IMG/VR virus record: IMGVR_UViG_3300045961_000282
Location: 62,001 to 126,000 of that record
Reading direction: 5' to 3' (one strand)
DNA: 64,000 bases
The notes beneath the pieces were generated by a model, which saw only the letters and a list, made by a program, of their open reading frames with translations, was not told the DNA's origin and did not search any database. Made by a program: the position numbers and the translations under genes. This document shows, piece by piece, positions 1,823 to 24,874 of the stretch (position 1 is the first letter of the stretch; each line of letters opens with the position of its first letter).

Positions 1823-2584
1823 TCAGCCGTTCAGCGGCACCCACCGCGTGCCGTTCCATGCCTTGGCATCCGAGCGCCAGCGGGTGCCGTTCCACATCTG
1901 GATCGGGTCCATCGCAACCCATGCAGAGCCGTTCCATGTCTTTGCTTCAGACTTGTCCTCGGGAACCTGTTGAGGCCCGGCCCATGTCGAGCCGGTGCCG
2001 TCCCAGAACATGTACACGTCGTCGATCCACGTCGTGGCTCCCGCCAGTTTGGTGAAGCGCAGCACCTCGGTGGAGGTATGGGTGCCGGTCAGAGGGGCAG
2101 CGCCCCCGTAGGGATTCTTGGCATTCACCCACTCCGTCCCGTCCACCCGAACGATCGCCTGCCCGACGTCCTTGCCGCCCGGCTTGAAGTAGACCTCGAT
2201 GTAGTGCCACTTGTTGAGGGTCAGCGTGTTCGTGGACGTGCCCCAGATCAAGAGTTGCGCGGTGTCACGCACCCGTATCTGCCCGGTCTGGGTGAGGCCC
2301 AGTGCGATGTCGGGGTTCGCCGTCGGGAACACCGCGAGAGCGCTGTTGACGACCGTCGTCGCCGAACCATACTTGAGAGCGAACCCCGCCCGCACCGAGC
2401 CCGAGCGGGCTCGTCCCTGCGCTGATATGGCGCGAAATGGGACGGTCGAGAGCGTTGCCCCGAAGAACTGCAAACACTTTCCCGTCCTGCCCGCGTCGAT
2501 GACGGAGAGGCCCGTGGCGGCGTCTACCCACGTGGGAGCAGAGTCCTGTGCGATGTTCGCACAGTTCCACAAGTAGTCAGTCAT
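1823..2584 (-). CDS. Putative fibre-tip adhesin (ConA/LamG-like beta-sandwich plus C-terminal triple WNGxxW repeat)
   Basis: 253 aa. LNKWHYIEVY...AIVRVDG...WIDDVY is a lectin-like pattern; it ends WNGSAWV-WNGTRW-WNGTRWV. Confidence 0.65.
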   Translation of the reverse strand: MTDYLWNCANIAQDSAPTWVDAATGLSVIDAGRTGKCLQFFGATLSTVPFRAISAQGRARSGSVRAGFALKYGSATTVVNSALAVFPTANPDIALGLTQTGQIRVRDTAQLLIWGTSTNTLTLNKWHYIEVYFKPGGKDVGQAIVRVDGTEWVNAKNPYGGAAPLTGTHTSTEVLRFTKLAGATTWIDDVYMFWDGTGSTWAGPQQVPEDKSEAKTWNGSAWVAMDPIQMWNGTRWRSDAKAWNGTRWVPLNG

Positions 2585-2587
2585 GGC

Positions 2588-3994
2588 TCAGCCCGCCGGA
2601 AGCCAGATGGTGCCCACGGTCGGGTTGGCGGGCGGGGTGGCACTCACCACGACCTTGCTGTCGACATACTCCTTGGTGGCAGCATGATCGGGTAGCGTCG
2701 GCTCCGCGACGGAGATGGGGATCAACTTCCCCGAGAGGGTCTGCCGGAAGTTGATCCCGTCGGCTTCGTCGGACCAGATCGACCGATCCACCGGACCCGA
2801 GAATCCTGTTCCCGTCTTGAGGATCAGGTCCTTGATCTCAAGGCCCTTGGCGGCCATGCGCCCGTTGGTGTTGTTGATGCTCAGCGTCGACTCGATGTAT
2901 GTGCCCGCGGCGTCATACCGGGCGACCGCCCACTCGCCGGGCTTGACCGACTGCTTCCAGCGGCGGATTCCGTCGAAGTGGTGATTGGTCGAGGTCTCGG
3001 TAGTCCCATAGGCGCCGGTGATGCCGTTGAGGTTCAGCGGGCCTTCCATGGTGTCGCCAGTCTTCTTGACGTATTCGAGGCCCGCTTCATCGACATATTG
3101 CTTGTTCGCCGCGTCGGTATTGTTCCCGGGCAGCGGCACGTTCCAGATCGCGCGCCCGTTGACGTCGATGGCCGGGCCGAGGATCGCGTCAGGCCCTTCG
3201 CGCGTGGCGAGGTTGAACATCAGGGGCCCCGTCATCGTGTCGCCGGTCTGCGCGACATAGCGGTCATCAGCCTCGGCCTGACCCATTCCCGATAGGCCGT
3301 CGACGTACTGCTTGTTTACCGCGTCCCGGTCATCCACCGGGTCGGCGAGGTTCGTCACCCGCTGCGGAGCCGTCCCGTTGTTCGTGATCTTGATCGGCTG
3401 ATTGCTGCCCAGTTGCAGATAGTCGATCCCGCGGATGTCGGTCCGCTTGCTGTACATGTCCATCTGGTCGATGGTCGAGTATTCGTTGCCGATCCCCACC
3501 ATCACCCAGTCATCGGTAGTGCGCTTGTGCAGGCCGAACGACGCCTGCTCGATCACCAGCGAGCCGGTCATCGTGTCGCCGGTCTTGGCCACGTAACGGT
3601 CGTCCAAGGCGAAGCGGTCGACATGGATCAATCCATCGTTGCCCAGTTTTGCCGCGTTGCCGGGGTCGGTGGACACCTTTGTCGGCCCCTCGGGACCAAT
3701 CGGACCCTGAATGCCCTGTGGCCCCTGTGGACCCTCACTGCCCTGTGGCCCCTGCTGGCCCTCGGGTCCGGGAGGCCCTTCGGGGCCCTGAACTCCCTCG
3801 GGGCCCTGAGGGCCCACGTCACCCTGCGGGCCCTGCGGTCCCTGCTCCCCCATGCCGACCCACTTCAGGCCGTCCCATGTCTTGGGCTGCCCATCGGTGG
3901 TGTCGAAGTAGGTGGCGCCCACGATCGGGCTGGCCGGAGGCGCGGCGAGCGCCACCAGCCCGATCGGAACGACGAACGTGTGAGCCTTGGCCAT
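2588..3994 (-). CDS. Collagen-like tail fibre protein
   Basis: 468 aa. Gly-X-Y run, repeated [11 protein letters not shown] and DAxNKxYVD motifs, ends [12 protein letters not shown]-terminus paralogous to 6295..7941. Confidence 0.8.
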
Positions 3995-4103
3995 TACGGT
4001 GGTCCTTCCGGGGGTGATGCCTCTCTGTCAGGGTAGCCGTGAGCCGCGCTCCCAAGGGGGCGTTTCCTCCAGTCGCCCCGTTCTTGCCGCCACGGCACTT
4101 TCG

Positions 4104-4928
4104 CTAGAAGGGACTCACGCTCAGTCGTTCGAACGAACCGTTGGCGACGCCCATGTATGCCCCCGCCCCCGCTCCACTCGAACGGCCTGCGCGACCCGCA
4201 ACCCTGAACCAGTTGCCATCCGCAGGGGCCGAGATGATTCCGGTGAGCACGCCGTGCGCGGTCCCGCCCCCAGCGAATCCCGTAGGAGCCCATAAGGATA
4301 ATACCGGAGAGAATGGATAGATAGTCCATCCAGATCCGTTGTAAGTCTCGAATCTAGCCTCTCGGAAAACCTGCTCACCAGAATCTGAAAAAATTGTCAG
4401 TGACACGCGATATGTGCCCTGCCCAAGCCACACCTGCCCATTCGCCTGCCACGCTACGCCTGTTTCGATTCCGTTCAGATGAAATCCTGATTTGATGGGA
4501 AGTCCATCGAATTCTCCCCAGCCACCATCGGCGGTCGGCCTCCACGCGCTTTCCTGACCATAGATTATCGAAATTGGAATACCGCGATCAACATCTTTTT
4601 TCTTGGCATACCTGTCATCAAGGATGCTCTCAGGAACGTAGATCAGGTTGTCGGTCCCCAGCGTCGCGAAATTGCCCGGGTCAACCGAGACGGCCGTTGG
4701 GCCCGCTGGCCCCACGGGACCCTGAATGCCCTGCGGGCCCTGCGGGCCCTGTGGTCCATCGCTTCCCTGCGGTCCCCGCTGCCCCTCGGGGCCGGGGGGT
4801 CCTTCGGGACCCTGAACCCCCTGCGCCCCCTGCGGACCAACGGCCCCCTGCGCGCCCGCCGGTCCGGGCGCGCCGACGATCGGCACGTACTGGCCAGAGG
4901 CCTCATCCCAGACCTTGAGAACGCCCAT
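4104..4928 (-). CDS. Collagen-like fibre protein with an AT-richer C-terminal domain
   Basis: Start moved to [14 protein letters not shown] (GGAGG upstream). Gly-X-Y repeat, then VSVDPGNxAxLGxDxLI shared with 2588..3994. Confidence 0.8.
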
Positions 4929-4945
4929 CAGCCCTCCTGCGGTTA

Positions 4946-5578
4946 CTATCGCCCGACGGCGATGTAGTAGATGCGGAACGCCCCGCCGTTGAAGGTGTGC
5001 CACAGACGAACCCATCCGAGCGATGGATTGTTCGGGTTCATCGCCGTGACCTGCCCGGCGTTGGCGCCGACGTCGCCGTTGATTGCATAGAAACTGATGA
5101 TTTCCGAAAGACCGGGAACTTTGAAGTCAGACGTCCCACCTCCGGAAAGAACTGCAGTTCCAGCCACCAATCTGGCCCCTTCGCCCATGATCGCGTCAAC
5201 GTAGCCCTTCGTAGCGGCTTCGTCGGCCTCGACTGGATTCGCGACCTTGACCCGAGCCTCTCCCGTCACCGCATCTGGGGTCGGCCGTGTGTAGAGCACT
5301 CCATTCTTGGCCTTGACGGTTTCGACGCCACGGACCTCGATGGTGCTCAACGGCCCCGTCATCGAGTCGCCCGACTTCTGCACGAACGACGACACGTCGG
5401 GAGCAGGCCCTTCCGGGCCCTGCGGCCCCTCGGGACCTTGGGCTCCGTCGGCTCCCGCAGGACCTTGCGGTCCCTCGGGGCCTTGGGGACCGGGCGGTCC
5501 CTGTGGGCCGCGAGGACCTGCCGTGTTCAGGGACCGCCACTCATTGGTCTCCGGGTCGCGGTACTTGATGACACCCAT
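4946..5578 (-). CDS. Short collagen-like fibre protein
   Basis: Start [14 protein letters not shown] is TGATG-coupled to the upstream stop. Gly-[10 protein letters not shown] and AATKGYVD motifs. Confidence 0.8.
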
Positions 5579-6291
5579 CAGGGCCTGCCTAGTGGAACCC
5601 AGCGGGTGCCGTTCCACACCTCAGCCTCGTGGCCAGATACCCAGCGGGTTCCGTTCCACAGTTCTGGGTAGGTCCACTTAGTGCCATCCCAGATCTGACC
5701 CGAAATCAAATCGGGTGGGTAGTTGAAGTTGCCGAAACTGAACCTGAATTCATCCTCTTCCCACTTGTTTGCACCCAGCCTGACGAAAACTACGTCCTTG
5801 GACCATGATATTAGGTGGCTGCCGATTATTTTCCAGCCCAATATTTTGCCGTTGTTTAGGGCGGGGGCGTATTCGAAGAACACCAGATCGTCTACGAAGC
5901 GAATTCGAAGCCATAAATATTGCAAAGAAACAGTTTCAGATTGTACATAATCTGTCCATCCCTGAGGATGGGTAACCGTTCCTTCTATCGAATCCGTTGA
6001 AACGAAGATGGACGCTTGCGCAGGACTCTTGCTTGAGTGAACTGAGAATTCAAGCGTAGCGTGATTGTATGGCCATTGAGTGACATCAATACTACAGAGC
6101 GCGTAAGAATTATCTGGAATGTAAGACGGATACGACTGCGCAGAAAACTCAGAAATGCCTACTCCGCCATCCTCCACCCACGCGCCTTGGTCACCAAAGC
6201 CTTCAACCACATCCCAGTCCCACCAGTTGCTCAGTGAATCCCTGAACTCGTGAAGTGGGATCGCAACAGCGCGCTCGTCGGGTTCGGTCAC
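5578..6291 (-). CDS. Putative fibre-tip adhesin (beta-rich, low GC) with C-terminal triple W(D/N)GxxW repeat
   Basis: 237 aa. Visibly AT-richer than its neighbours; ends WDGTKW-WNGTRW-WNGTRWV like 1823..2584. Confidence 0.65.
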
Positions 6292-6294
6292 AGA

Positions 6295-7941
6295 TCAGCC
6301 CGCCGGAACCCAGATCGTGCCCGGTGCCGGATCGGTCGGGCGGGTGGCGGCGATGACGACGTTGCTGGCTGGCTCCGTCCACTGGGGACGCCCGTACATA
6401 TCAAGAGAGAGAACCTTTCCCTCCTGAGCCAACGCGTTCCCTAGGTCGATCCGTGGCAACAACCGCAGCGCGTACGCGTTGCCACTCCGCTGGATCAGAG
6501 TGATGGGAGTCCAGTGCGCATTCTCGTCGCCCGGGTACGAGGGGGGCTCAAGAGTGGGGCGGTTAAACGTACACTGCCACAGCGCCTTGCTTGGCTCGTG
6601 CCACACGATGTCGCCGACGAAGTACCGACCACCCGCCTCCCATGTCGCGGGTGCCGCGGGCGGATTCGACGTGTCATCGGTTCCGCGCAGTGACGAGTAG
6701 AGCCGGGTGAGCCACTCGGATGGGTCGGGACGGTTTCCTCCGGGAATCCTCCACGTTGGCTCGCCATCCACCATAGTCAGAACTGATCCATCAGTTCCTC
6801 CGGTGAAAACCTGCACCTCTCCGGCAGGCCAACCTCCAATTACGAGATCGACACCCAAGTCGATGTCCCAGCCCATACTATTCGGGTTAATCGACTTGAT
6901 GGTATAGGTCTCCAGATCCGTACCACCGGACCGAATGAAAACAAACGAATCGCCCGCCTTGAGCGATGAGAAGTAACTCTCGCCGTCTGTACCGTTCTTG
7001 TCTACGCTGGCAACCCACGCCATCTTGTAACTGGAATCTACGGTCCATGAACCCGGGGCGAACCTGCCAGCAACGCCCCACGAGGTGCTCTTGGTGTAGA
7101 CCAGCGGGGGTTGGGCGGGCGGCAGTCCCTCATTCGGGACATCCATCGGCTCCCACTGCCCCTCAGCAGTGGTGCCCAGCACCTTGCCCGCCGGAGTGTC
7201 GGCCGGGGCCGTGACATCGGTAAGACCGTCGAGCACGCTGGCTCCGGGCTCGATCGGAATCGTCACCCCGCCAGAGCGGACATGGACCTTGCTGTTTTGG
7301 ATCCACATGGAGCCGTTTGAAGGGTTGGATGGCACATCACGCCAACCGTTTCCGACGGTGAGCACGCCGCCGATGAACAGAGGTCCGTTGGTGGAGGTGC
7401 CTTCCGGGGTGATCTCAAGATATGGGTAAGCGGGACCTTCGTCGACAGTCAGGCGAATCTTCCGCTTCTGAACAATTGCAGAAGTGGTCGAATCTGGCTT
7501 CATAGCCATTTCTTGATAGACTCGGAACTCTCCGAACGACTCGACAATCGACGTCGGGCCGGGAATCCATTCCTTGGCGACCGAATCCCAAATCAAGAAA
7601 ACGCGGCTGCTTCCTCCGTCCGGCAGCGCCGCAGCGCCCCCCTCGCCGCCCTCGGGCTCGGCGTCGGTGTCCCACCACAGGCCGGTGCGCTGCGGGTCCG
7701 GCGCGGGGGCGGGGGGCTCGTCGGGCTGGGCGAACATGATCGGGTACTGCAGATGGTCGTCGCCCTCCAGCCCGGTGAGTTCGCCGTGGTCGGCGACGCC
7801 GGACACCCACTGGGTGCCGTCCCACGTGCGGACCAACTTCAGGGTGGTGTCGAAGTAGGTGTCGCCCACGGCGGGGCTGTCAGGTGCTTCCGCCAGCGCG
7901 ACCAGACCAACGGGGACGACGAACTTATGTGCCTTGGCCAT
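6295..7941 (-). CDS. Tail fibre protein with a possible carbohydrate-binding module
   Basis: 548 aa. MAKAHKFVVP N-terminus; WEAGGRYFVGDIVWH...LWQC resembles CBM5/12-like modules; ends PAPGTIWVPAG. Confidence 0.75.
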   Translation of the reverse strand: MAKAHKFVVPVGLVALAEAPDSPAVGDTYFDTTLKLVRTWDGTQWVSGVADHGELTGLEGDDHLQYPIMFAQPDEPPAPAPDPQRTGLWWDTDAEPEGGEGGAAALPDGGSSRVFLIWDSVAKEWIPGPTSIVESFGEFRVYQEMAMKPDSTTSAIVQKRKIRLTVDEGPAYPYLEITPEGTSTNGPLFIGGVLTVGNGWRDVPSNPSNGSMWIQNSKVHVRSGGVTIPIEPGASVLDGLTDVTAPADTPAGKVLGTTAEGQWEPMDVPNEGLPPAQPPLVYTKSTSWGVAGRFAPGSWTVDSSYKMAWVASVDKNGTDGESYFSSLKAGDSFVFIRSGGTDLETYTIKSINPNSMGWDIDLGVDLVIGGWPAGEVQVFTGGTDGSVLTMVDGEPTWRIPGGNRPDPSEWLTRLYSSLRGTDDTSNPPAAPATWEAGGRYFVGDIVWHEPSKALWQCTFNRPTLEPPSYPGDENAHWTPITLIQRSGNAYALRLLPRIDLGNALAQEGKVLSLDMYGRPQWTEPASNVVIAATRPTDPAPGTIWVPAG

Positions 7942-8015
7942 CGCGGCGTTCCTCTCGGGGACGATCTGTGCCTACCGTGAGAGTACCGACGGAAGGCGGC
8001 GGTGGAGCGTCGTTT

Positions 8016-8174
8016 TCATTCATCTGCGGCGTCCGACCAGACCGAAATCCAATGGCCCTCACCATCGGACACCCAGACCCCCCGCGCGGGCGCCCACTGC
8101 CCCTCGTCGGTCATGACAGACACCGCAGTGGGCGGGACCCACCCCGTTCCGTCGCAGACCGTCAGCGGGTTCAT
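8016..8174 (-). CDS. Small 52-aa triple-Trp hairpin protein (below the ORF-track cutoff)
   Basis: ATG at 8174 overlaps the upstream TGA (TGATG). Hand translation: MNPLTVCDGTGWVPPTAVSVMTDEGQWAPARGVWVSDGEGHWISVWSDAADE, with three D-G/E-x-x-W units. Confidence 0.75.
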   Translation of the reverse strand: MNPLTVCDGTGWVPPTAVSVMTDEGQWAPARGVWVSDGEGHWISVWSDAADE

Positions 8175-8632
8175 CAGTATTGGATCCACACCGTTCCGGC
8201 GGGCTTGAGGCCCGAGGCTGGCTCCCGCGAGGTGATGAGCGCCGAGTCGCCGCGGCGGACCTCTTCGTCGGCGGGCGGGAACAGGGCGAACACCCCGTCG
8301 CCCTCGGTCTCGACGTAGAGTTTCAGGTTGTCCGGCGCGCGCGGGCCTTCGAGGCCGATCTGGACCTCGTCGATCAGCGCGGCGGAGATGGTGATGGTTC
8401 CGTCGCCGTTGTTGACGATCATGTCGCCGAGGACGTCCTGCGGGCGCAGGTAGTGCCCGTCGTGGGTGTGGTCCTTCAGCGCGTAGTTGTTCGAGACGTA
8501 GGTGAAGGTCGGGAACAGCGCATCGACTTCATCCTTGGTGTAGAAGTCGTCGAACTCGCTGTGCGCGTGATTGGGGACGTCAGGTTGCTCCCACTCGCCA
8601 GTGACGCCGTTGAAAATCCACACCTTGGCCAT
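8174..8632 (-). CDS. Short fibre-associated protein
   Basis: 152 aa. MAKVWIFNGVTGEW start, HxH metal-type fibre motifs (HAH, HTHDGHY), ends PAGTVWIQY. Confidence 0.7.
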   Translation of the reverse strand: MAKVWIFNGVTGEWEQPDVPNHAHSEFDDFYTKDEVDALFPTFTYVSNNYALKDHTHDGHYLRPQDVLGDMIVNNGDGTITISAALIDEVQIGLEGPRAPDNLKLYVETEGDGVFALFPPADEEVRRGDSALITSREPASGLKPAGTVWIQY

Positions 8633-8696: not shown

Positions 8697-10835
8697 TCAG
8701 CCTGCGACGCGCCCGCCGGTCACGATGACGCGGTAGGTGCCGTCGGTGGCCTCAACGGTCACCGCATTCACACCGGCAGTGCAGACCGCCGCGCCGATGA
8801 AGCAAGCGCCGTCCCGCACCGCCACGATCACATCCTCGGTGCCGAGGTTGTGGGTGAAGGTGCCGGTTCCACCTGAAACGACGACCTGACCACCGACCGT
8901 CACCGCAATGCCTGCGGTAACAACGTCACCTCCAAGGCCCCCTTCAAGGTCACTCTTCAGTGCGAAGTCGGAGAGGTCGATCGCCAGCCCGCTGCCATCC
9001 TGCGACAGGACACCATCGGGATCAGCGATCTTGAGGCTGACGGCCTGCGTGTCAGCGTCGACATCGATCGCGTCCACGCCCGTAGCCGCCTTGTGAGTGT
9101 CGGCAATCGCACCGGAAACCGACCCGGTGGTGGCGTAGCCGCTGAGGTCGATCGCCAGACCCGCAGCGCTCTGCGACAACTCGGACGAAGCGAGATTGAG
9201 GCTAACTTCCTGCGTATCCGGATCCACCTCGATGGCGCTCGCCAGTGCCGCATTGGCGGCCTTATGGCTGTCTGTCGTCAGTTCGGTGATGTTCTGCTCG
9301 ATCGTGGTGATGTTCTGCTCGATCGTGCTGACATCGCCCTCAATGGTGACGACCTTGTTTTCGACCGTCGTGACCCGGTTATCGAGGTTGGTGACATTGG
9401 TCTGCAGGTTGGTGACGTCACCCGCCACGGCCTCGATTTCGTCAGTGAGGTCCTTGACGTACAGGCCCTCACCGGCGTTCAACTTGAGCGCCTGATCGGC
9501 CTCGCCCGACACCTTCACCGCAAGGCTGGAGGTCGGACCGGTCGGGTTGGCAATCGTCAGCGAATCGTTGACGTTGATCGCATTGATGCCCGCCGATGCA
9601 GCGGCCAGTTCCACCCACGCGGTCCCGCTGTAGATGAACGCCGAACCGGTACCGGTGTTGATGTACAGGTCGCCCGCCTGCACGTCAGTGCCGTCGAGTT
9701 GGGCATCGATCTCGGCGCCGTTTGAAGCCGTCCCTGAGTAGGTGTCGGCCAACCGCACTGCCTCAAGGGTCAGATTGAAAACGTCACCGGTCTTGTCGAC
9801 AACGATATAGCCGTCCGTCGTGATGTTGATTTCATCGATCCGCCCGTTGACCGCAGTCTCGACAGCACCTGCGGCAGCGGAAGCGGCGGCGTTCGCGGCG
9901 GTATCACGCGCGGTGGTGTACGCCGGATCGATGCCGACCTCGAACGTACCGTCACCCTTGACGACAGTGGTCTGGCCAGTGACGCCGTTGACGTCAATCT
10001 TGGAAGCAGCACCGGTGGCGATCTGGGTTCCCAACCAATCGGTGTCGATGCCGACGGCGAAGTTGCCACCGAGGGTCCCGCCACCCGTCAGGCCGGTGCC
10101 TGCGGTGACCGTGGTGGTCTTGTCGGCCTTGTTGGTATCGAGCAAGCCCTCGGCCGCCGTGGCGCGGTCGATCTCGGCCTGCAATGCCGACTGGTCGGCC
10201 TTAGCGGCGACGGTCGCCTTGAAAGCGGCGTCGAGACCGACGGTGTAGACGCCGCCAGTCTCACTGACGCCAATCTCACCGCCCACGCCCTGAACGTCGA
10301 TGTTGCCGACGGAGGCCTCAAGGTCGGTGACCTTGTCTTCCAGATCGGTGAGAGCGCCCGACAGATCCTCGACGAAGACGCCGTCCGAACTCACTACCAC
10401 GGCGTTGCCCTCGGTCGGACCAGCGACCACCGACACCACATCGGGGTCACCGCCTGTGCCCTCGACGATGGCGATGCCGTCACCGGCTTCGAGGTTGTTG
10501 GCAGAGAGTTCGGTGATCTTGTCATCGATCCACGTCTCGCTGACCTGAACCTCATTGTCCCCACTGAACTCAAGACCCACGCCGATAGCAACATCAAGCA
10601 TCAGATCATCTGCAAGGTCGCCGCCGCCCGTCAGGCCGCGACCCGTGTCGACCTTGCGAGTGTCAGGAACGTATCCATCGAGGGCACCACCCTCGCCCGT
10701 GATGCCCTCAAGGGCCTCGCCGATGGCATCGGTCAACTGCCCGAGGTTGACGGCCTCGTCGCTCGCCTCTGCGGCGAGTAGGCCCTCGATCTTGTGGTTG
10801 GTGAGGTCGAGATCTACGTAGAACTTCTGTGCCAT
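8697..10835 (-). CDS. Long fibre protein (coiled coil, AGTGLTGGG repeats, C-terminal HNLG domain)
   Basis: Start moved to MAQKFYVDL. TGxGLTGGGxL repeats, heptad run VTNLQTNVTNLDNRVTTVE..., C-terminal THNLGTEDVIV. Confidence 0.75.
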   Translation of the reverse strand: MAQKFYVDLDLTNHKIEGLLAAEASDEAVNLGQLTDAIGEALEGITGEGGALDGYVPDTRKVDTGRGLTGGGDLADDLMLDVAIGVGLEFSGDNEVQVSETWIDDKITELSANNLEAGDGIAIVEGTGGDPDVVSVVAGPTEGNAVVVSSDGVFVEDLSGALTDLEDKVTDLEASVGNIDVQGVGGEIGVSETGGVYTVGLDAAFKATVAAKADQSALQAEIDRATAAEGLLDTNKADKTTTVTAGTGLTGGGTLGGNFAVGIDTDWLGTQIATGAASKIDVNGVTGQTTVVKGDGTFEVGIDPAYTTARDTAANAAASAAAGAVETAVNGRIDEINITTDGYIVVDKTGDVFNLTLEAVRLADTYSGTASNGAEIDAQLDGTDVQAGDLYINTGTGSAFIYSGTAWVELAAASAGINAINVNDSLTIANPTGPTSSLAVKVSGEADQALKLNAGEGLYVKDLTDEIEAVAGDVTNLQTNVTNLDNRVTTVENKVVTIEGDVSTIEQNITTIEQNITELTTDSHKAANAALASAIEVDPDTQEVSLNLASSELSQSAAGLAIDLSGYATTGSVSGAIADTHKAATGVDAIDVDADTQAVSLKIADPDGVLSQDGSGLAIDLSDFALKSDLEGGLGGDVVTAGIAVTVGGQVVVSGGTGTFTHNLGTEDVIVAVRDGACFIGAAVCTAGVNAVTVEATDGTYRVIVTGGRVAG

Positions 10836-10869
10836 GTCTGTGTGCCCTTTCAAGGGGTGAACGTGCCGT

Positions 10870-10913
10870 GTCGCAGTGTCGCTTGCCCGCGGGGGCACAC
10901 AGTCGCAGTGTCG
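10870..10913. repeat. 12-bp direct repeat GTCGCAGTGTCG x2 in a divergent intergenic region
   Basis: Exact copies at 10870-10881 and 10902-10913, a 32-bp period. Confidence 0.7.
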
Positions 10914-11093
10914 TTCGCTACAAGTAGGGGGTCCTGCCGCTGGCAGTCTAGCCACGCAGCGCCGCGCCGAACGGGGAAATCCGCGGGAATCCTGCGCGGC
11001 CCGCTGCCCTGTTATGCTCCCGCGGCGCGGCGGGAATCCGTGGACGGATCGGTAGGGTGCCGCGCATCATGTCGGCGGTGGAGGGAGCCCTCG

Positions 11094-15249: not shown

Positions 15250-16727
15250 GGCCGACTGCCCCCCCACCCGCCAGTGCCGACGGCCCGGTGGGTGCCGTCC
15301 GAGGTCCGCAGGTACCGCAGGCCCTCGGAGTCCGACCCGGTGTCGACCTCGGGTGTCGGGGTGGTCTCCTCGACCGACTGGTCCTCCTCGTCGGGGCCGA
15401 TGTAGGGGTTGCGGGAGTTGATCGTGATCTCAGGCTTGACGTCCTCGATGCCGTCGTCGTTGGGGGTCACCGTGATGCCGCCGATCACGACGTACAGGTC
15501 CTCGGGGCGCACGTCGGACCCGGCGAAGATGTCGTCCTCGATCTTGATGCCGATCTCGTCGCCCATGAAGTATTGCTCGGTCCCGGGTGGGCCGAAGGTC
15601 GGCGGAAGGTCGGGATGCACAGTCAGGTCGAACTCGCCGACCGGCGGGTCGAAGGCCCGCAGGTACTTGGCTGCGTGCGACTCCATCGTGGCCTTGCTGC
15701 TGACCGTGGAGTGCGTGTAGGCCACGTCGATCAGCGGCCACCCCTCGTTGAGACGCTGCTGGTTGTAGAGCACCGCGTAGGCGCGCAGGTCGCCCTCGCC
15801 CGCGCCGAGCACGTAGGCCGCAGTCGCCGACTTGTCCGCATCGGCGGTCCATGAGTAGGACAGCATGTTGGCCGGGAATTCCCAGATGAACCCGGTCTCG
15901 AGGAACGGGCGGCCGAACCGCGGCCACGCGAACTCGATACGCCGGTCGACGCCGGAGATCGAGGTGGACCCCTCGGGCGCCTGCGCCACCGTGGCGTACC
16001 ACTCGAAGCCGTCCTTGAGCCCGGCGAGGGTCTCCAGATGCTCGCCGTAGGTGCGGAAGTCCCACTTCATGAACGACCGCCCCCGCTTGACCGTGTTGCG
16101 CGGCGTCGGACTGAGCAGCACGTGGATGTCGGAGTTGGGCCGCGGCGGCAGTTGGGCGGTTCCCAGCATGCCGCCCAGATACTCGCTTCGGTTCCCGCTC
16201 ATGTGGTCCCACAGCACCCGGAACATGTCGATCTGGTCGGTGCCCTCGATCGGCGGGTTCTTGGTCATGTCGCGGATGAACATCAGGTCCTGATCGAGGA
16301 TGCGGTGGTACATGTACGAATCGAAGGTGTCGCCCTCGATCTTGACCACCCGCTCCCCCGAGGACAGCGTGCGCTTCCACAGGATGCCGCCCCAGATCGG
16401 CACGCCGTCGCGGAACACGTAGACCACCGAGCGCCCGGGCGTCGTGGCCGTCATGTAGTCGCGCACCCGCGAGAACACCGGCACCGGCAGGTCGGCGGAG
16501 AACGTGCCGGGCTTCTTGATCGACCATGAGAACTGCACGTTGCGCAGCGGCAACTCCGCGATGGGGACGTCGGTGAACAGGTCGCACGCGACGTAGACGT
16601 ACTCGTGCCTCCGCCCATCCAGCGGCAGGCGACGGCCCAGCACGCTCGCCGGGGTTGCCCGCCCGACATCCACACCGACCTGCATCGGTGCAGACCACGT
16701 GCCCTCGACGCGACTGGACCCCGGCAT
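15246..16727 (-). CDS. Minor tail protein (tail-hub / ReqiPepy6 gp37-like)
   Basis: TGATG-coupled. IAELPL..VQFS....PGTFS, RDGVPIWGGILWKR, WEFPANM and AYVLGAGEG motifs; second gene after the tape measure. Confidence 0.75.
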   Translation of the reverse strand: MPGSSRVEGTWSAPMQVGVDVGRATPASVLGRRLPLDGRRHEYVYVACDLFTDVPIAELPLRNVQFSWSIKKPGTFSADLPVPVFSRVRDYMTATTPGRSVVYVFRDGVPIWGGILWKRTLSSGERVVKIEGDTFDSYMYHRILDQDLMFIRDMTKNPPIEGTDQIDMFRVLWDHMSGNRSEYLGGMLGTAQLPPRPNSDIHVLLSPTPRNTVKRGRSFMKWDFRTYGEHLETLAGLKDGFEWYATVAQAPEGSTSISGVDRRIEFAWPRFGRPFLETGFIWEFPANMLSYSWTADADKSATAAYVLGAGEGDLRAYAVLYNQQRLNEGWPLIDVAYTHSTVSSKATMESHAAKYLRAFDPPVGEFDLTVHPDLPPTFGPPGTEQYFMGDEIGIKIEDDIFAGSDVRPEDLYVVIGGITVTPNDDGIEDVKPEITINSRNPYIGPDEEDQSVEETTPTPEVDTGSDSEGLRYLRTSDGTHRAVGTGGWGGSRP

Positions 16728-18532
16728 CAGGACCCCATCCAGCCAGAGCGGTAGACCACCCAGCACTGGGTAGCGTCAAGGTCATCCGTGGTCGGCGGGT
16801 TGTTGGCAGGATCGACAGCGCCGTTGGCGTGGAACGTCAACTCGTTGTCGCCCTGCTGCAGGTAGATCCACGGGCTGGACAGTTTGAGCATCCACCGCCG
16901 GTTCTCGCCGTTGATGTCGTGCTGGTACATGTCGTCAACCATCACGTCTGCGGCCTGCCGCAGCACGACGGTGCGCCAGTAGCAGTCGACGATCAGCACC
17001 TCGCCGGTACGGATCGATCCTTGGAACGCCATGGTCTGGTTGGTGGTCCGATTGACGATCTTCGAATCGGTGGCGGGTCCGAAGATGTAGAACCGCGGCC
17101 ACACGTTGGTGGTGCCCTTGTTGACCGCAGGAAGGTAGGGATCGAACTCGACCGAACCATACGCTCGCCCGGGAGTCGGCGTGTAGCGCTGGTTGTGGCC
17201 CTCATCCTCGACGAGGTAGTCGCGGCCGTCGGTGGTTCCGTTGACCTTGATGTACTTGCGGTCCAACCCCCGTGCCCCCGACAGGTACTTCACCGGGTCC
17301 ACAGCCTTCAACTGCACCTCGAACTCAGTGCGACCGGTGCCGTCAAGGGTGTCGACCTTGGGCTGGTCGGACAGCCAGACCCACGCCTGCTTGGGCCACG
17401 GACCCTGCTCCCAGTCATGGAGCCCCTGATAGTCGAAGAACTCGACGTTGTTGCCCATCGGCTCCTTGGCCACGAACAGCGCGCCCGTGCGCACCGCATC
17501 GAGGGCGCGCAGCAGCCGCAGCCGCGGGACGGCCACCGACACCCCGCGGCCCGGCGTGAACGCCCCGCGCAGGGTGATGATGCGTGGCTCGTAGCGCCCG
17601 TCGATGGGGAACGACCCGTTGAGGTACCCCGGGCGCGGCAGGTCGGGCAGCGCGGGCGGCGGCAGGGTCCACCAGCCGTCGATGTCCAGCAGGCTCCAGC
17701 GGGTGCCGTCGGGGTCGGTGTAGTTCAGCAGCAGGGTGTCGGGTTCGTTCCAGACGTTGACCTCGGGAACATCCCAGTACGGCGCGACGGCGTTGTTGTT
17801 GATCAGGAAGACGTCCGATGCCTCGCAGGGCCCCGGCTTGGCCCAGAAGTCGTCGGACTCCGTCGGCGGCGGCTTGATGATCTCGCCGGTCCAGCGCAAC
17901 AGCAGAGCGGCATGGAACCACGGCCCCTGCCCGACCGAGCCGACGGTGTACTCCTGCTTGTTCCACGCATAGGCCGTGATCAGATCCGCAGGATCGGAGA
18001 CCTGCCCCTTGAGCGCGACGTGTCCGACGTCGTCCTTCCGGATGGTCGGCGGCTGGCCCTTTGAAGCGAAGATCCCGACGTAGGCCCGACGCTCATCCGT
18101 CCCCGACTCCAGCAGATCCAAGTTCCCTTCGCCATCGACCTGCGCGATCGTCATGCCGCTCATCGGCCGCCCATCGGCGTTGCGCACGAACGGCCCCGAC
18201 ATGGCCATCCCCAACGCCCGCCACTTGACCGGGTTGATCGGCGACGGGCTCAGGCGCAGCACGAGATCGTTCTGGATCGGCCCCTCGGCAACAAGGACAA
18301 CGGCAGTTTGTCCCGCGAGGGTCGAACCGTCCTCTGCACCCAACTGCCCATACTTGACGAATGACCCGGATCGCACCGAGACCTCAACCTCTGCGTCGAG
18401 GGTCAGCATGATCAGGTTCGCCAGCGAGTTGTAGGCCAGTTCGGAGACGTTGATCCGGATCTCTCCATCGATCGTCTGCCCGATGAAACTGGCCGTCGAC
18501 TGGACGATGTTGTTGACCGTCACGGTGCTCAT
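16727..18532 (-). CDS. Distal tail (Dit-like) protein with an N-terminal extension
   Basis: Directly after the tape measure. IDGWWTLPP...RYEPRIITLRG, QLKAVDPVKY, NKGTTNVWP...GPA and LQQGDNEL...YRSGW motifs. Confidence 0.75.
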   Translation of the reverse strand: MSTVTVNNIVQSTASFIGQTIDGEIRINVSELAYNSLANLIMLTLDAEVEVSVRSGSFVKYGQLGAEDGSTLAGQTAVVLVAEGPIQNDLVLRLSPSPINPVKWRALGMAMSGPFVRNADGRPMSGMTIAQVDGEGNLDLLESGTDERRAYVGIFASKGQPPTIRKDDVGHVALKGQVSDPADLITAYAWNKQEYTVGSVGQGPWFHAALLLRWTGEIIKPPPTESDDFWAKPGPCEASDVFLINNNAVAPYWDVPEVNVWNEPDTLLLNYTDPDGTRWSLLDIDGWWTLPPPALPDLPRPGYLNGSFPIDGRYEPRIITLRGAFTPGRGVSVAVPRLRLLRALDAVRTGALFVAKEPMGNNVEFFDYQGLHDWEQGPWPKQAWVWLSDQPKVDTLDGTGRTEFEVQLKAVDPVKYLSGARGLDRKYIKVNGTTDGRDYLVEDEGHNQRYTPTPGRAYGSVEFDPYLPAVNKGTTNVWPRFYIFGPATDSKIVNRTTNQTMAFQGSIRTGEVLIVDCYWRTVVLRQAADVMVDDMYQHDINGENRRWMLKLSSPWIYLQQGDNELTFHANGAVDPANNPPTTDDLDATQCWVVYRSGWMGS

Positions 18533-21500
18533 GCGCGCCTCCGATGCCTGAACGCAACCTCACGGCTGACCTTGACCGCCAGTTCGCGCTCGCTCATCCC
18601 CGGCGCCGGGAAGATCTGGAACGTGTCGCCGCCACGAACCCCGCTGGCCATGAGCGCCTCGGACATCTTGCGCAGTTCGGCGAGCATCTCGACCTCGGTC
18701 TGGCTGCGCCCCTTGGAGTCCAGCGGGGTGACCCGCTCGTGCCGCCCGCCCTCGGCCAGCAGCGCGGGGACGCCACCGGGGGTCGCCTTCACGATGCCGC
18801 CCTTGGCCAGCCGCACGCCGCGGCGCGCCATCATCCTGCGGGCGTCGTCGAAGCCCAACTCGAAGTGCAGGTGAGGGCCGGTGGATCCACCCGTGTTGCC
18901 CGACAGGCCGATCCGCTGGCCGACGCGCACCTTGGTCCCCACGCCGACGAACCGCTTGCTCAGGTGGGCGTACAGGCTGCGCGTGTTGTCGTGGTGCAGG
19001 ATCGCAAGGTACTGACCGTAGGACTTGTTCCCCCTGTCGGCCGAGGTGATCACGCGCCCCGAGGAGACCGCCTGCACGACGATGCCCGTCGGCGATCCGA
19101 TGTCGTAGGCGAACCACGGGTTGTGCCCACTGCGCGTGTAGGAGGGGAACCGCCGCGCCAACGGGTAGGTCCATCCATCGGCAGGGCCCTTGTAGGGCTC
19201 CACGGGACCCCCTGCACCGGACGACTTGTCGGCATCCAAGCCCTTCTGCGCCTTGTCAGCGAACTGTCGCAGCAATTGCAGGTTGTTGCGGAAGTAGTTG
19301 GTGACAAGCCCAATCATTCCGTCCTTGTCGGGAATCAGGGACAGGCCATTGGAAATGAGCGTGTTCAGTGCGTGGAACGCACCCTTGATCAACAGGTCAT
19401 CGATGAAGTCGGGCTTGAGGCTGCCCACCCAGTCCGTGGCCTTGCCGAACCACTCCTTGGCCCCACCCTGTGGCGGCGGGCCGCCTCGGCGCCACTTATC
19501 CAACGAGTCCTTACCAACCTGCTTGACCATGTTGCGCGTCAGCACGTACTCGCCCGGCGTCAACCGGGCCAACACGTTGTCGGCCCTGTCGCCGCGGTTA
19601 GGTCCCTTGACCTCACCGCCCGTGGCGTACCCGGGGATCCGCTTCAGTTCCTTGAGGTCAACGAAGGGCAACTTGTTCAACGACGGGATGATGTACTCGT
19701 TGATCTTGTCGGTCACCCAGTTGCTGGCCCGCGCCGCGCCCGACTTCAATCCGTCCCACAGGCCCGACATTCCGTCAGCAAATCTCTGCGGCAAGCCCCT
19801 GACCCACGGGATCACCGTGTCCGTGAAGAACGTCTTGAGCGAAGTGAACCCACTGACCGCCTTGTCCTTCAAGGACCCGAACAGGTTCCCGATGTTCTCT
19901 GCCACCCTGCTCGGCAGTCCCTTGACCCACGGGATGAAGGATTCCCTGAGCCACGTACCGAGGGAGACCATCAGGCCCTTGGCCTTCTCGATGATCCAGC
20001 CCCAGATGTTGATTCCAAGGTTGAGGATCTTGCCCGGGAGTCCCACCAGCCATGGCACGAATGAACCCACGAACCAGTTGGCAAGTTTAGGAATCAGATC
20101 AACGGCCTTGTTGACGATCCACGCGAAGATATCGATTCCCAGCGACAGGATCTTGAACGGCAGCGTCAGGAACCATGGAATCAATTTTGTGACGAGCCAC
20201 TTGCCCAAGCCTGAAATCAGATCCCATGCCTTGCTGAGCACCCATCCGAAGATGTCAATCCCCAGACCGAGGATCTTTCCGGGGAGCCCGGTCACCCACG
20301 GGATGAAACTGGTCGTGAACCAGTCGGTGACGGCGGGAACGATGTCCTTGACCTTGTCGGTGATCCATCCCCAGAAGTTTCCACCACCCTCGCTGGCCTC
20401 CTTGGGCGCGCCCTTGATCCATGGGATGAACGTGCCGGACCACCACTGCTGGATTGCGGGGATGATGTTGGAGATCTTGTCGGTGATCCACCCCCAGATG
20501 TTTCCAGCCGCATCGGATATCTTCGAGGGAAGACCCTTGAACCAAGCCCCGACCTTCTTCCCGAACTCCACCAGTTTCGGCTGAACCTTCGGCCAGATGT
20601 TCTGGAAGAACAGAATGATGAGTCCAATTGGGTTCGACGCCATGAGCAACGTCTTCCAATTCGACTTGAACCAGTCAGCAACCTTCTGACCGAATTCTTC
20701 AAGTGGGGCCTTGATCTTGCCCCAGAGGTTGCTGAAGACCTCCTTGATCTTGTCCCACGCCGCCGAGAACGCGCCCGTGATCTTGCCCCACAACTTGGGC
20801 GCCTCGGTGCTGAAGTTCTTGAAGAAGTTGATGATCTGATCGATGCTGATGCCGAACATTCCCAGCACATCGATGACCATCCACACGGCGCCGATGACGG
20901 CACCAACTGGGCCGAGGATCGCGAGGAATCCCTTGCCGAGGGCCTTCAGGCCCAACTTTCCGGCCACCTTGCCGAAGCCGCCCCAGATCTTGCTCAGGCC
21001 AGAGCCAACCTTGCCGAACTTTCCGGCCTTCTTGGCGGCATCAGCCATGTCGTCGGCTGCGCCAGCGACGGCGCCCCCCTTGCCGACCTTGCCGCCGAGG
21101 CCACCACCAACACCGCCGCCCGTGGTGACCGTGTCGATGATGACCGGCCCCGCGGACTTGGCCCCCAGTTTCGCAGCAACAGCGGCGTCCCTGCCTTCAT
21201 CGAACGCGTCGACGGACATGCCGTTCAAGGCGCGGCCGAAGTCGCGCTTGATCTCCATGCCGACTTCGGTGCCGGTCGTCTCAGTGGCGGTCTTCAGTCC
21301 TCGCTCAACAGCGTTGCCCATCTCGGTGCCGATGGACCCGACTCCGTTGGTCGCCTTGTCGAGTTCGTTCTTGATCTCGGCACCGACCTCGGAACCTGTG
21401 GTCTCCGTGGCTGCCTTGAGCCCCTGTTCGAGGCTGTTGCCCATGTCGGAACCCACGTCGGTCAGGCCCGTGGCAGCCTGCCGGAGTTCGTTCTCGATCT

Positions 21501-24867: not shown

Positions 24868-24874
24868 CGCTACA

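What the first reader, a model, noticed from the sequence alone, without database searches (positions are those of the whole stretch)
1823..8632. Three fibre + triple-Trp partner pairs: a modular trimer-to-monomer adhesin system
Seen: each gene ending in P..GT(I/V)W (8174..8632, 6295..7941, 2588..3994) is immediately followed by a gene with three tandem (D/N)GxxW-type hairpins. These are the unannotated 52-aa gene 8016..8174 (repeat only) and two genes with unrelated lectin-like domains in front (5578..6291, 1823..2584). Established analogy: the T-even/S16 gp38 monomeric adhesin docks on the gp37 trimer through three tryptophans. Inference: a pseudo-threefold plug that caps trimeric fibres with swappable receptor-binding heads, with the 52-aa version acting as a blank cap.
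Basis: partly seen in the sequence, partly recalled or inferred. Interest (0 to 1): 0.66.

Follow-up and report, generated by a model that had tools for sequence, protein, structure and literature searches.

The report
Three-hairpin plug for trimeric phage fibres
In this phage, and in many others, a tail-fibre gene that ends in a short proline/tryptophan strand is followed by a gene with exactly three tryptophan hairpins, and modelling predicts that one copy of the second protein locks onto the three chain ends of the fibre, giving a likely general way to mount exchangeable single-chain binding heads on three-chain fibres.

Summary
The 548-aa and 468-aa fibres end in ...P..P..GTIW(V/L)PAG*. 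Each is followed within 3 nt by a gene ending in three W(D/N)GxxW hairpins (237 aa, 253 aa). The 152-aa fibre ends ...KPAGTVWIQY*, but its 52-aa follower has only degenerate repeats and no profile support.

A fourth canonical pair lies just left of the window.

The syntax is general:
- In IMG/VR contigs the hairpin count is fixed at three.
- 57 of 112 hairpin ORFs follow a gene ending in xVxVxSxxPxxxxxGDxWxx*, against 35 of 1549 control ORFs.
- Many of those fibres carry collagen repeats just before the tail, so they are trimers.

A 3:1 model (three tails, one hairpin module) scored ipSAE 0.74, best control 0.00. Each tail lies on a different hairpin. The module's pLDDT fell from about 85 to 37 when the tails were replaced.

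Best reading: a small strand-plus-hairpin module, found whole in other fibres, is split between two genes. It lets a monomer with a ConA-like head cap a trimeric fibre.

This works like T-even gp38 on gp37 but uses a different structural device. All evidence is computational. I found no description in the literature.

The parts
8174..8632 (-). 152-aa short fibre or adaptor. It has an N-terminal single hairpin (MAKVWIFNGVTGEW), HxH motifs, and a C-terminal tail ...REPASGLKPAGTVWIQY* (tail = 8177..8239).
   Evidence: ORF and sequence. GC3 0.90. A tail profile built only from foreign tails ranks it 4th of 3666 genome ORFs, though E is only 0.55.
8016..8174 (-). 52-aa ORF in the partner position. 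It has three degenerate xDGxxW-like units with a period of about 15 residues. It is a possible head-less cap; membership is unproven.
   Evidence: TGATG overlap with the fibre's stop and GC3 0.79. Not hit by the triple-hairpin profile. hhalign in register but p about 0.06 against shuffles. No relatives.
6295..7941 (-). 548-aa fibre. Its N-terminal module is complete in cis (strand plus one hairpin, residues 17-47 = 7801..7893). Its C-terminal tail is ...VVIAATRPTDPAPGTIWVPAG* (6298..6360).
   Evidence: The C-terminus gives a weak DUF7360 match at residues 532-545. The N-terminus hits phrog_20787.
5578..6291 (-). 237-aa partner. It has a beta-sandwich head (about residues 45-190, ConA-like by fold search) and a C-terminal triple hairpin (residues 199-233 = 5593..5697).
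   Evidence: E 5e-12. AF2 model. Foldseek against PDB. Relatives P0009, P0010, P0015 and P0017 share head and hairpins.
2588..3994 (-). 468-aa collagen-like fibre. It has the N-terminal cis module (residues 17-47 = 3854..3946), Gly-X-Y repeats at residues 49-104, and the C-terminal tail ...[21 protein letters not shown] (2591..2653).
   Evidence: Pfam Collagen 34.3 bits against a cut-off of 27.2. The foreign-tail profile ranks this tail first in the genome (E 0.003). Residues 448, 450, 454-455 and 458-467 form the predicted interface.
1823..2584 (-). 253-aa partner. It has a ConA-like/LamG jelly-roll head (residues 1 to about 210) and a C-terminal triple hairpin (residues 213-253 = 1826..1948).
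   Evidence: E 1e-12. ESM-Atlas structure matches at TM 0.72-0.77 to LamG and polysaccharide-lyase-like clusters. The hairpin module was used as the partner chain in the 3:1 model.

Best explanation
Proposed mechanism: a split docking module joins a trimeric fibre to a monomeric distal protein.

- The socket. The fibre gene ends in a conserved tail, xVxVxSxxPxxxxxG(D/T)x W xx*, so a fibre trimer presents three free C-terminal strands.
- The plug. The next gene is translationally coupled to the fibre gene. It encodes a protein with exactly three tandem W(D/N)GxxW beta-hairpins, at its C-end, N-end or middle.
- The junction. Each fibre strand pairs with the first strand of one hairpin, and the tail Trp packs on that hairpin's second Trp. 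Three small three-stranded sheets form around the fibre axis at 3:1 stoichiometry.
- Co-folding. The hairpin module is predicted to be ordered only when the tails are present.
- The head. The rest of the partner (ConA-like jelly rolls in this window; FN3, LRR, Gly-rich, beta-helix-like or nothing elsewhere) is thereby mounted as a single-copy head on the fibre tip. It most likely acts in glycan or cell-wall recognition.

Shown by computation: the motifs, the fixed copy number of three, the gene adjacency, the trimer-type fibres, and the predicted interface.

Inferred, not shown: real binding, presence in the virion, and receptor-binding function.
For: 1. In-genome rule, 4 of 4. Every gene ending in the tail is followed by a hairpin gene (three canonical, one degenerate). 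Fibres without the tail are not.

2. Generality.
- A DNA-pattern scan of IMG/VR gave 60 non-junk ORFs, each with exactly three hairpins.
- A two-hairpin scan showed a degenerate third hairpin in nearly all non-junk cases.
- 57 of 112 hairpin ORFs with upstream DNA are preceded by a tail-motif gene ending at their start, against 35 of 1549 control ORFs in the same loci (odds ratio 45).
- The stop-codon frame is spread 20/21/15, so readthrough is not the explanation.

3. The tails belong to trimers. Collagen Gly-X-Y repeats lie 3-35 residues before many tails and occur in the 468-aa fibre.

4. The 3:1 model.
- ipSAE was 0.75, 0.72 and 0.74; the best of three controls was 0.00.
- Partner pLDDT was at least 84 and the runs agreed in at least 93% of contacts.
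- The mark was reached by 58 of 80 solved complexes and 2 of 110 mismatched pairs. Those counts hold only roughly here, because my own alignments and a 3+1 design were used.
- All three fibre copies use the same residues, and each contacts a different hairpin. Examples: T84 with partner residues 4-5, 19 and 28-31; W86 with W10 and W36.
- With the tails replaced, partner pLDDT fell to 37.

5. The same sequence exists unsplit.
- Bacillus phage Grass gp85 has ...VIVSATEPANPVNGTIWLNT... followed in cis by a Y-K-D-G-V-W hairpin.
- The N-termini of the 468- and 548-aa fibres carry strand plus one hairpin.
- They align weakly with the C-terminal module of Gp49 in PDB 9d83.
- 54 of 55 hairpin modules hit only the second half of Pfam DUF2510.

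6. Relatives keep plug and socket while shafts and heads change (L160 with P0009, L162 with P0013).

7. A cultured example: Rhodococcus phage Mbo4 gp22 (collagen, tail) is followed by gp23 (N-terminal triple hairpin plus a CBM-like head).
Against: - No experiment exists. The complex score is a model's confidence, obtained with hand-made alignments and outside the tool's calibration design.
- Only 3:1 was tested.
- About half of the hairpin ORFs have no recognisable tail gene upstream, for example the L094 family, the L005 family and Rhodobacter phage RcPescado gp14. Either the socket can be encoded elsewhere or the hairpins have another use.
- Homology between the tail and the first half of the cis module rests on short motifs with weak E-values (0.1 to 0.14). 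The tail profile does not hit the N-terminal cis modules.
- The AF2 model of the 237-aa partner is of low quality (pLDDT 59.6).
- The adjacency counts include related contigs, so the p-value is inflated.
Confidence: 0.62

Rival explanations
1. The partner is a tail-fibre assembly chaperone or transient cap. It binds the three C-terminal strands to nucleate or protect trimer folding, and is released or lost before or at infection. It is not a permanent receptor-binding head.
For: - The gene sits directly downstream of the fibre gene, as tfa-type genes do.
- Head-less hairpin-only ORFs exist (the 52-aa ORF here; L026 and L096).
- The hairpins are predicted to be ordered only with the tails, which also suits a folding helper.
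- Chaperone caps on fibres are documented in other phages (PMC10579305 abstract; Pam3 gp25, PMC9608196).
Against: - Most partners carry large and very diverse extra domains (ConA-like, FN3, LRR, Gly-rich, beta-helix-like). A pure chaperone has no need for these.
- No Pfam or PHROG match to Tfa or other chaperone families.
- The documented Tfa-type complex of Pam3 is 3:3 with a trimeric chaperone, unlike a fixed triple repeat in one chain.
Confidence: 0.13
2. Tail and hairpins do bind, but not at 3:1. Each fibre chain recruits its own partner (3:3), or the partner itself oligomerises. The spare hairpins then serve another purpose.
For: - Only the 3:1 arrangement was modelled.
- Pfam DUF2510-type cellular proteins, and cis modules such as Grass gp85, show that one strand plus one hairpin is a self-sufficient unit. 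One hairpin per tail is therefore all that binding needs.
Against: - The copy number is fixed at exactly three in all 60 pattern hits, and a degenerate third hairpin is visible in the two-hairpin hits.
- In cis there is one hairpin per chain, which gives three per trimer, the same ratio.
- All three hairpins are engaged equivalently and confidently in the model.
Confidence: 0.1
3. The hairpins are not a docking device. They are a Trp-rich glycan-binding or cell-wall-binding repeat, and the adjacency merely reflects that fibre genes and accessory binding proteins cluster together.
For: - The hairpin profile gives weak local hits to the blade hairpin of the Ralstonia fucose lectin RSL.
- Half of the hairpin ORFs lack a tail gene upstream.
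- Rhodobacter phage gp14 lies beside nuclease and RNR genes.
Against: - Clustering alone does not explain a roughly 45-fold enrichment of one specific C-terminal motif in the gene immediately upstream.
- It does not explain the fixed number of three hairpins.
- It does not explain the confident, symmetric tail-hairpin interface with zero-score controls.
- The RSL hits are single hairpins inside 45-residue propeller blades, which is a different architecture.
Confidence: 0.07

Closest known systems
T-even / S16 long-tail-fibre tip: gp37 trimer capped by the monomeric adhesin gp38 (PDB 6F45; PMC6851490)
   Same: - One monomer sits on the end of a homotrimeric fibre, using a three-fold repeated element with conserved tryptophans spaced 120 degrees apart.
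- The adhesin gene follows the fibre gene.
- A variable distal part determines binding.
- Che8 gp25 combines the triple hairpin with a glycine-rich domain (PF21722), which recalls the glycine-rich part of gp38.
   Different: - gp38 attaches through a three-helix bundle whose apical Trp residues enter pockets on the side of the gp37 beta-helix.
- Here the elements are beta-hairpins that pair with the fibres' free C-terminal strands.
- There is no sequence or family match.
- The heads in this window are ConA-like jelly rolls, not polyglycine sandwiches.
Pfam DUF2510 (PF10708), a 35-residue module of unknown function
   Same: 54 of 55 triple-hairpin modules match it, best E 3e-8. The matched part is the WDGxxW hairpin.
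   Different: - Only about profile positions 17-24 match. The window's own modules score below the gathering cut-off (16.7 against 24 bits).
- My recollection, not tested here, is that the family is mainly actinobacterial and that its profile begins with a GWY.DP-type strand that the partners lack and the fibre tail could stand in for.
- No paper in the searched library mentions the family.
Unsplit (cis) strand-plus-hairpin modules in fibres: the N-termini of the 468- and 548-aa fibres, Bacillus phage Grass gp85, and the C-terminus of Gp49 in PDB 9d83/9d84 (probably Shigella phage B2 gp49, PMC11654681)
   Same: - The sequence logic is the same: P..P..G.(I/L)(W/F/Y)... followed by x(W/Y)xDGxW.
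- In B2, gp49 co-purifies with a second fibre protein, gp48, as a C3 complex. The module therefore sits in a protein that forms a two-protein C3 complex.
   Different: - One hairpin per chain, with both halves in one polypeptide, in a symmetric trimer.
- The matches are weak (E 0.1 to 0.14).
- The identity of 9d83 Gp49 with B2 gp49 rests only on the C-terminal residues encoded by a published primer.
- I could not inspect the coordinates.
Tfa-type tail-fibre assembly chaperones (Mu Tfa; Pam3 gp25 with gp24)
   Same: [quoted passage not shown]
   Different: - Pam3 gp25 is a trimer that binds 3:3 through beta-sandwich domains and a helical trimerisation domain.
- There is no family match here.
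Pfam Phage_tail_C (PF24243), a 26-residue 'phage tail tip domain'
   Same: - It is a short conserved C-terminal fibre end with the pattern ...P....G.LYV..*.
- It is present in the 507-aa fibre just left of the window and in a neighbour of P0009.
   Different: - By eye only (not tested), it looks complete in cis, with a W.GT...Y hairpin before the strand.
- The 507-aa fibre that carries it is followed by a 515-aa ORF with no triple W[DN]G..W cluster.
- The window's tails do not match it.

Membership tests
gp38-type monomeric fibre-tip adhesins (T2/T6/S16) | N-terminal three-helix attachment domain with one apical Trp per helix | tested here: not met
   The repeats are 12-15-residue W(D/N)GxxW units. 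AF2 assigns only short strands there. No sequence or Pfam similarity was found. The feature itself is described in PMC6851490.
gp38-type monomeric fibre-tip adhesins (T2/T6/S16) | One monomer bound to the distal end of a homotrimeric fibre (3:1) | tested here: met
   Met in prediction only. Three tails plus one module scored ipSAE 0.74 against a best control of 0.00, and each tail sits on a different hairpin.
gp38-type monomeric fibre-tip adhesins (T2/T6/S16) | Polyglycine (PGII) sandwich receptor-binding domain | tested here: not met
   The window heads are ConA-like beta sandwiches. A glycine-rich domain (PF21722) is found only in the analogous Che8 gp25.
Pfam DUF2510 (PF10708) | Match to the whole 35-position profile above the gathering score (24 bits) | tested here: not met
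   The 253-aa module scores 16.7 bits on profile positions 17-24 only. The 330-aa partner scores 15.8 bits. 54 of 55 modules hit the same half.
Tfa-type tail-fibre assembly chaperones | Sequence-family match (Pfam or PHROG) to tail-fibre assembly or chaperone proteins | tested here: not met
   No such family for the 52-, 237- or 253-aa proteins. The only hit is phrog_2448 (unknown function) for the 253-aa head.
Collagen-like trimeric phage fibres | Gly-X-Y triple-helix repeats above the Pfam cut-off | tested here: met
   The 468-aa fibre scores 34.3 bits against 27.2 for PF01391. 8 of 58 tail segments carry collagen repeats within 50 residues of the tail. L162 runs from a long collagen stretch straight into the tail. 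The 548- and 152-aa fibres have no collagen repeats.
ConA-like lectin/glucanase (LamG-like) fold, partner heads | Structural match of the head to ConA-like jelly rolls | tested here: met
   This row is for the 253-aa head: TM 0.72-0.77 by query to LamG, PL14 and related clusters.
ConA-like lectin/glucanase (LamG-like) fold, partner heads | The same, for the 237-aa head | tested here: inconclusive
   The AF2 model has pLDDT 59.6. The top Foldseek hits are all ConA-like (3o12, 3mep, GH16 glucanases, galectin-7, phage J-1 Dit CBM2) at E 2e-5 to 1e-3, but TM is at most 0.52.
Triple-hairpin plug (the class defined here by alignment A1) | Three in-register W(D/N)GxxW hairpins detected by the A1 profile | tested here: met
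   Met for the 253-, 237- and 330-aa proteins, at E 1e-12, 5e-12 and 1e-8.
Triple-hairpin plug (the class defined here by alignment A1) | The same, for the 52-aa ORF 8016..8174 | tested here: inconclusive
   No hit at E up to 10. The hhalign alignment is in register with score 14.4, but 2 of 50 shuffles reach it. Position and translational coupling fit.
Pfam Phage_tail_C (PF24243) fibre tip | Profile match at the C-terminus | tested here: not met
   No hit for the 152-, 548- or 468-aa fibres at E up to 1. The family does hit the neighbouring 507-aa fibre (28 bits).

The most novel reading that the evidence does not exclude
The tail and the hairpin are two halves of one universal phage plug-and-socket, and the socket accepts more than one kind of plug.

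- The same C-terminal socket of a trimer could accept a monomer carrying three hairpins, or another trimer carrying one N-terminal hairpin per chain.
- Many fibres in this genome begin with such a hairpin, for example MAKLWYRDPVTDQW or [14 protein letters not shown].
- Phages could then build chains and branches of fibres, and swap heads combinatorially across distant lineages, with folding of the plug coupled to binding.

This would be a general assembly grammar for fibre networks. It could be used to re-target phages of actinobacteria and others by exchanging cassettes.
Probability: 0.2. Interest if true: 0.85.

Novelty: new variant of a known kind. Interest (0 to 1): 0.7.

Why it matters
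How a one-chain receptor-binding protein is mounted on a three-chain fibre is known in atomic detail for very few systems; the one verified here is gp38 on gp37.

If this split strand/hairpin junction is real, three things follow.
- It is a second, structurally different solution to the symmetry mismatch.
- It is widespread. It also appears in Rhodococcus phage Mbo4 and, with a variant tail, in Mycobacterium phage Che8.
- It gives a sequence rule that annotators can apply. A fibre ending in ...P....G.xW..* followed by a gene with three WDGxxW units marks the distal binding head.

It also marks natural cassette boundaries for host-range studies in laboratory phage-host pairs. It would assign a role to many small or orphan 'hypothetical' and 'minor tail' proteins, and to half of the DUF2510 motif.

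Tried and rejected
- Megablast of the region and tblastn of both partners against 50,697 phage records found no match.
- phmmer of both partners, and a profile of the hairpin module, against PDB found no solved relative. There were only weak local hits to RSL lectin blade hairpins, rejected as a different architecture.
- Stop-codon readthrough or a split gene read as one: rejected. The fibre stop falls in all three frames relative to the partner (20/21/15), and start codons sit at the junction.
- A fifth tail-motif ORF near genome position 197,680: rejected as an antisense frame over a 192-aa plus-strand gene.
- A tail profile built from foreign tails did not detect the N-terminal cis modules. 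Homology of the tail with the first half of the cis module therefore rests on motif-level matches only.
- Word-based homologue searches of the 253-, 237- and 52-aa proteins gave 2, 0 and 0 relatives. Only the exhaustive search found nine relatives of the 237-aa protein.
- Literature searches found no description of the system. The searches covered 9D83, the gp38/S16 terms, gp49, pseudo-threefold/monomeric RBP, DUF2510, TfaMu, and mycobacteriophage glycine-rich minor tail proteins. One call failed on a term that was too short.
- P0011 from the exhaustive search, a membrane protein with KLWxGxxWV repeats, was set aside as unrelated.
- I did not claim a 3:1 stoichiometry for Mu Tfa, because I could not verify it. 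The Pam3 paper reports 3:3.
- Not used: the reads tools, any genetic code other than table 11, and any sequence taken for human.


Full report
SETTING

The window is bases 62,001-126,000 of a single 206,257-bp IMG/VR virus record. The record is linear and CheckV rates it 99% complete. It is about 65% G+C. It has no nucleotide or protein match to the region of interest in 50,697 deposited phage genomes.

All relevant genes are on the minus strand. They lie downstream of a siphovirus-type structural module:
- major head protein, 37824..39821
- major tail protein, 36077..37135
- tape measure protein, 18529..24951
- Dit-like protein, 16727..18532

After a 752-aa coiled-coil fibre (8697..10955) comes a long array of fibre genes. 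It runs past the left end of the window.

THE OBSERVATION

The three gene pairs exist as described.

- The 548-aa fibre ends ...DPAPGTIWVPAG*, and the 468-aa fibre ends ...[12 protein letters not shown].
- Each is followed after 3 nt by a gene whose last 40 or so residues hold three W(D/N)GxxW units (237 aa and 253 aa).
- The 152-aa protein ends ...KPAGTVWIQY*. Its stop overlaps, as TGATG, the start of a 52-aa ORF with coding-like GC3.
- The repeats of that 52-aa ORF are degenerate.

The 52-aa ORF has little independent support:
- A profile of 55 triple-hairpin modules hits the 253-, 237- and 330-aa proteins among all six-frame ORFs of the genome (E 1e-12, 5e-12, 1e-8). It does not hit the 52-aa ORF.
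- hhalign aligns it in register, but 2 of 50 shuffles score as high.
- It has no relatives.

Two pairs are therefore solid, and the third is probable by position only.

A fourth canonical pair lies just outside the window. A 136-aa protein ending ...PADPPVGQIWVPL* (L154:10411-10821, minus) overlaps by 4 nt a 330-aa protein with the triple hairpin in its middle (L154:9422-10414, minus).

Fibres that do not end in the tail are not followed by a hairpin gene. These are the 608-, 303-, 223- and 507-aa fibres.

GENERALITY

A DNA pattern for three in-frame WDG..W/W(D/N)G..W units found 66 IMG/VR loci, six of them low-complexity junk.

- In the remaining ORFs the module sits at the extreme C-end, at the N-end, or rarely in the middle, of proteins from 44 to more than 1500 residues.
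- The other domains are unrelated to one another: LamG-like, FN3, beta-helix-like, or none.
- Every ORF has exactly three hairpins.
Nearly all non-junk cases show a slightly degenerate third hairpin.
- In the alignment of 55 modules the W, G and W of each unit are invariant.

In most loci with upstream sequence, the gene that ends within a few bases of the partner's start terminates in xVxVxSxxPxxxxxG(D)xWxx*. The P and the W are invariant over 58 tails.

- Against other ORFs of at least 150 aa in the same loci, the enrichment is 57 of 112 versus 35 of 1549, an odds ratio of 45. Related contigs inflate the p-value but not the effect size.
- The fibre's stop lies in all three frames relative to the partner (20/21/15). 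Readthrough of one long gene is therefore not the explanation.
- Many tails follow collagen Gly-X-Y repeats by only 3-35 residues. The tails therefore emerge from obligate trimers.

Close metagenomic relatives of the 237-aa partner keep the arrangement while shaft and head change:
- In L160 a 202-aa collagen fibre ending ...RPANPAPGTIWVPEG* precedes P0009. P0009 has the same head, a near-identical plug in the middle, and then BspA-type LRRs.
- In L162 a long collagen fibre ending ...RPASADPGTIWVPSG* precedes P0013.

Cultured phages:
- Rhodococcus phage Mbo4 gp22 (minor tail protein, collagen repeats, ending ...LPGSGTTGVIYWIPV*) is followed by gp23. gp23 has an N-terminal triple hairpin and a head that its annotators matched to PDB 4B1M by HHpred.
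- Mycobacterium phage Che8 gp24 (minor tail protein) ends in a variant tail...GTAGVLYVVVP*. It overlaps gp25, which has an N-terminal WNGxx(F/Y) triple hairpin and a Pfam glycine-rich domain.
- Rhodobacter phages carry an 82-aa protein with a C-terminal plug but no tail-motif gene upstream.

STRUCTURE PREDICTION

I modelled three copies of the last 90 residues of the 468-aa fibre (alignment of 58 tails) with one copy of the 41-residue plug of the 253-aa partner (alignment of 55 modules).

- ipSAE was 0.75, 0.72 and 0.74. The best of three controls was 0.00.
- Partner pLDDT was at least 84, and the runs agreed in at least 93% of contacts.
- The tool's mark was reached by 58 of 80 solved complexes and 2 of 110 mismatched pairs. 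Those counts hold only roughly here, because my own alignments and a 3+1 design were used.

The interface has these features:
- The three fibre copies use the same residues: 70, 72, 76-77 and 80-89 of the fragment. These are V448, V450, P454, P455 and P458-A467 of the protein.
- Each copy lies on a different hairpin. T84-W86 of one copy pairs with A28-W31 and touches W36. Another copy touches T4/W5 and W10. The third touches W19.
- The invariant residues of both motifs are therefore at the interface.
- In the control that kept the plug but replaced the tails, plug pLDDT fell to 37.
- AF2 likewise leaves the hairpin region of the free 237-aa partner below pLDDT 50.

This suggests that the plug folds on binding. 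It is a model's confidence, not a measurement.

WHAT THE MODULE IS

The tail and one hairpin together look like a single small module that other proteins carry unsplit.

- The 468- and 548-aa fibres begin with ...PP.SP.VG.TYFDTT......TWDG..WV.
- Bacillus phage Grass gp85 contains ...VIVSATEPANPVNGTIWLNT..., 70% identical to the window tail over 20 residues. A Y-K-D-G-V-W hairpin follows it directly.
- The C-terminus of Gp49 in PDB 9d83/9d84 aligns with the N-terminal module, with an ...FDTTLGKPIWFNGTAWVD end (E 0.14).
- Its last residues match those encoded by the published reverse primer for Shigella phage B2 gp49. That protein is a tailspike component that co-purifies with gp48 as a C3 complex.
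- Pfam DUF2510 is hit by 54 of 55 plugs, but only in its hairpin half.

In cis there is one hairpin per chain, which gives three per trimer. In trans there are three hairpins in one chain for three tails. The ratio is the same, and this is the main argument for 3:1 apart from the model. These links are motif-level and individually weak. The tail profile does not detect the cis modules.

THE HEADS

- The 253-aa head matches LamG and polysaccharide-lyase-like jelly rolls at TM 0.72-0.77.
- The 237-aa head has a modest AF2 model (pLDDT 59.6). Its Foldseek hits are uniformly ConA-like, including GH16 glucanases, DUF1349-like proteins, galectin and a phage Dit CBM, at E down to 2e-5 and TM up to 0.52.
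- The two heads share no sequence similarity beyond the plug.

Carbohydrate recognition is the likeliest role, but this is inference.

COMPARISON WITH KNOWN SYSTEMS

The system works like gp38 on gp37 of S16 and other T-even phages: a monomer on a trimer, with a three-fold repeated Trp element. It fails that family's defining features. In gp38 the attachment uses three helices whose apical Trp residues enter pockets of the gp37 beta-helix.

It is not a Tfa-type chaperone by sequence. The Pam3 example of that type is 3:3.

I found no description of the triple-hairpin/tail pair in the searchable literature. That search is limited.

VERDICT

This is a real, non-random and widespread gene-pair syntax. 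Its best explanation is a split strand/hairpin junction that mounts a monomeric head on a trimeric fibre at 3:1.

- Confidence is about 0.6 for physical 3:1 docking. It is lower for the receptor-binding role and for the 52-aa 'blank cap'.
- Novelty: a new variant of a known kind.

Noticed in passing
L154:9422-10821 (genome 60421-61820, just left of the window): A fourth tail/plug pair. A 136-aa short fibre ending ...PADPPVGQIWVPL* overlaps by 4 nt a 330-aa protein whose triple hairpin sits in the middle (about residues 150-185), between two other domains.
   Followed up: partly
window 3854-3946 and 7801-7893 (minus strand): The 468- and 548-aa fibres share a near-identical N-terminus (MAKAH.FVVP.GLVALA...). 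It carries the whole strand-plus-hairpin module in cis. This is probably their own attachment end, and it resembles the C-terminus of Gp49 in PDB 9d83.
   Followed up: partly
window 4104-5617 and 2-1741; L154: Several other fibres (223, 303, 608, 507, 136 and 152 aa) begin with a single N-terminal hairpin of the type M..(L/I)K(Y/V)(W/R)D(P/E)..(G/D/N)(E/Q)(W/Y). Whether these dock on the same kind of socket was not tested.
   Followed up: no
L154:2917-4440 (minus strand): A 507-aa collagen-like fibre ends in Pfam Phage_tail_C (PF24243, 28 bits). By eye this tip motif looks like a hairpin followed by a ...P....GVLYV..* strand. It is similar to the variant tail of Che8 gp24.
   Followed up: partly
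window 46008-57938 (minus strand): A giant 3976-aa ORF in the structural region upstream of the head gene. Its only Pfam match is an RNase_T/DEDD exonuclease domain at residues 790-991.
   Followed up: partly
window 40131-44006 (minus strand): A 1291-aa ORF with a 2'-5' RNA ligase superfamily domain (residues 200-303), next to the major head protein gene.
   Followed up: no
window 18529-24951 (minus strand): The 2140-aa tape measure protein carries a C-terminal metallo-endopeptidase/endolysin-like domain (about residues 1940-2035 by PHROG matches).
   Followed up: no
window about 29100-29200 (inside ORF 28656-31352, minus strand): The 898-aa collagen-rich protein has one cis strand-plus-hairpin unit (...[22 protein letters not shown]...) near its C-terminal end.
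   Followed up: no
window 8174-8632 (minus strand): The 152-aa adaptor-like fibre contains two HxH motifs (HAH, HTH). From my own knowledge, not tested here, such motifs bind metal ions on the axis of some trimeric fibres.
   Followed up: no
L157 (Rhodobacter phage RcPescado gp14) and L058: Small proteins with a C-terminal triple hairpin whose upstream gene ends ...GTVRGGGK(I)(A/I)HG* instead of the tail motif. They lie beside nuclease and ribonucleotide reductase genes. This may be a different partner or a different use of the plug.
   Followed up: partly
L094, L099, L100, L109, L133, L141 (IMG/VR): A family of proteins of about 760-776 aa starts with the triple hairpin (MHKVWDGTEW... / MQKVWDGSNW...) and has no tail-motif gene upstream.
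   Followed up: no
L154:8580-9425 and 9422-10414 (minus strand): By eye, the C-terminal domain of the 330-aa partner resembles the start of the next gene (281 aa), with W.PW...WRY...V.YRGL.K motifs. This suggests a duplicated distal domain.
   Followed up: no
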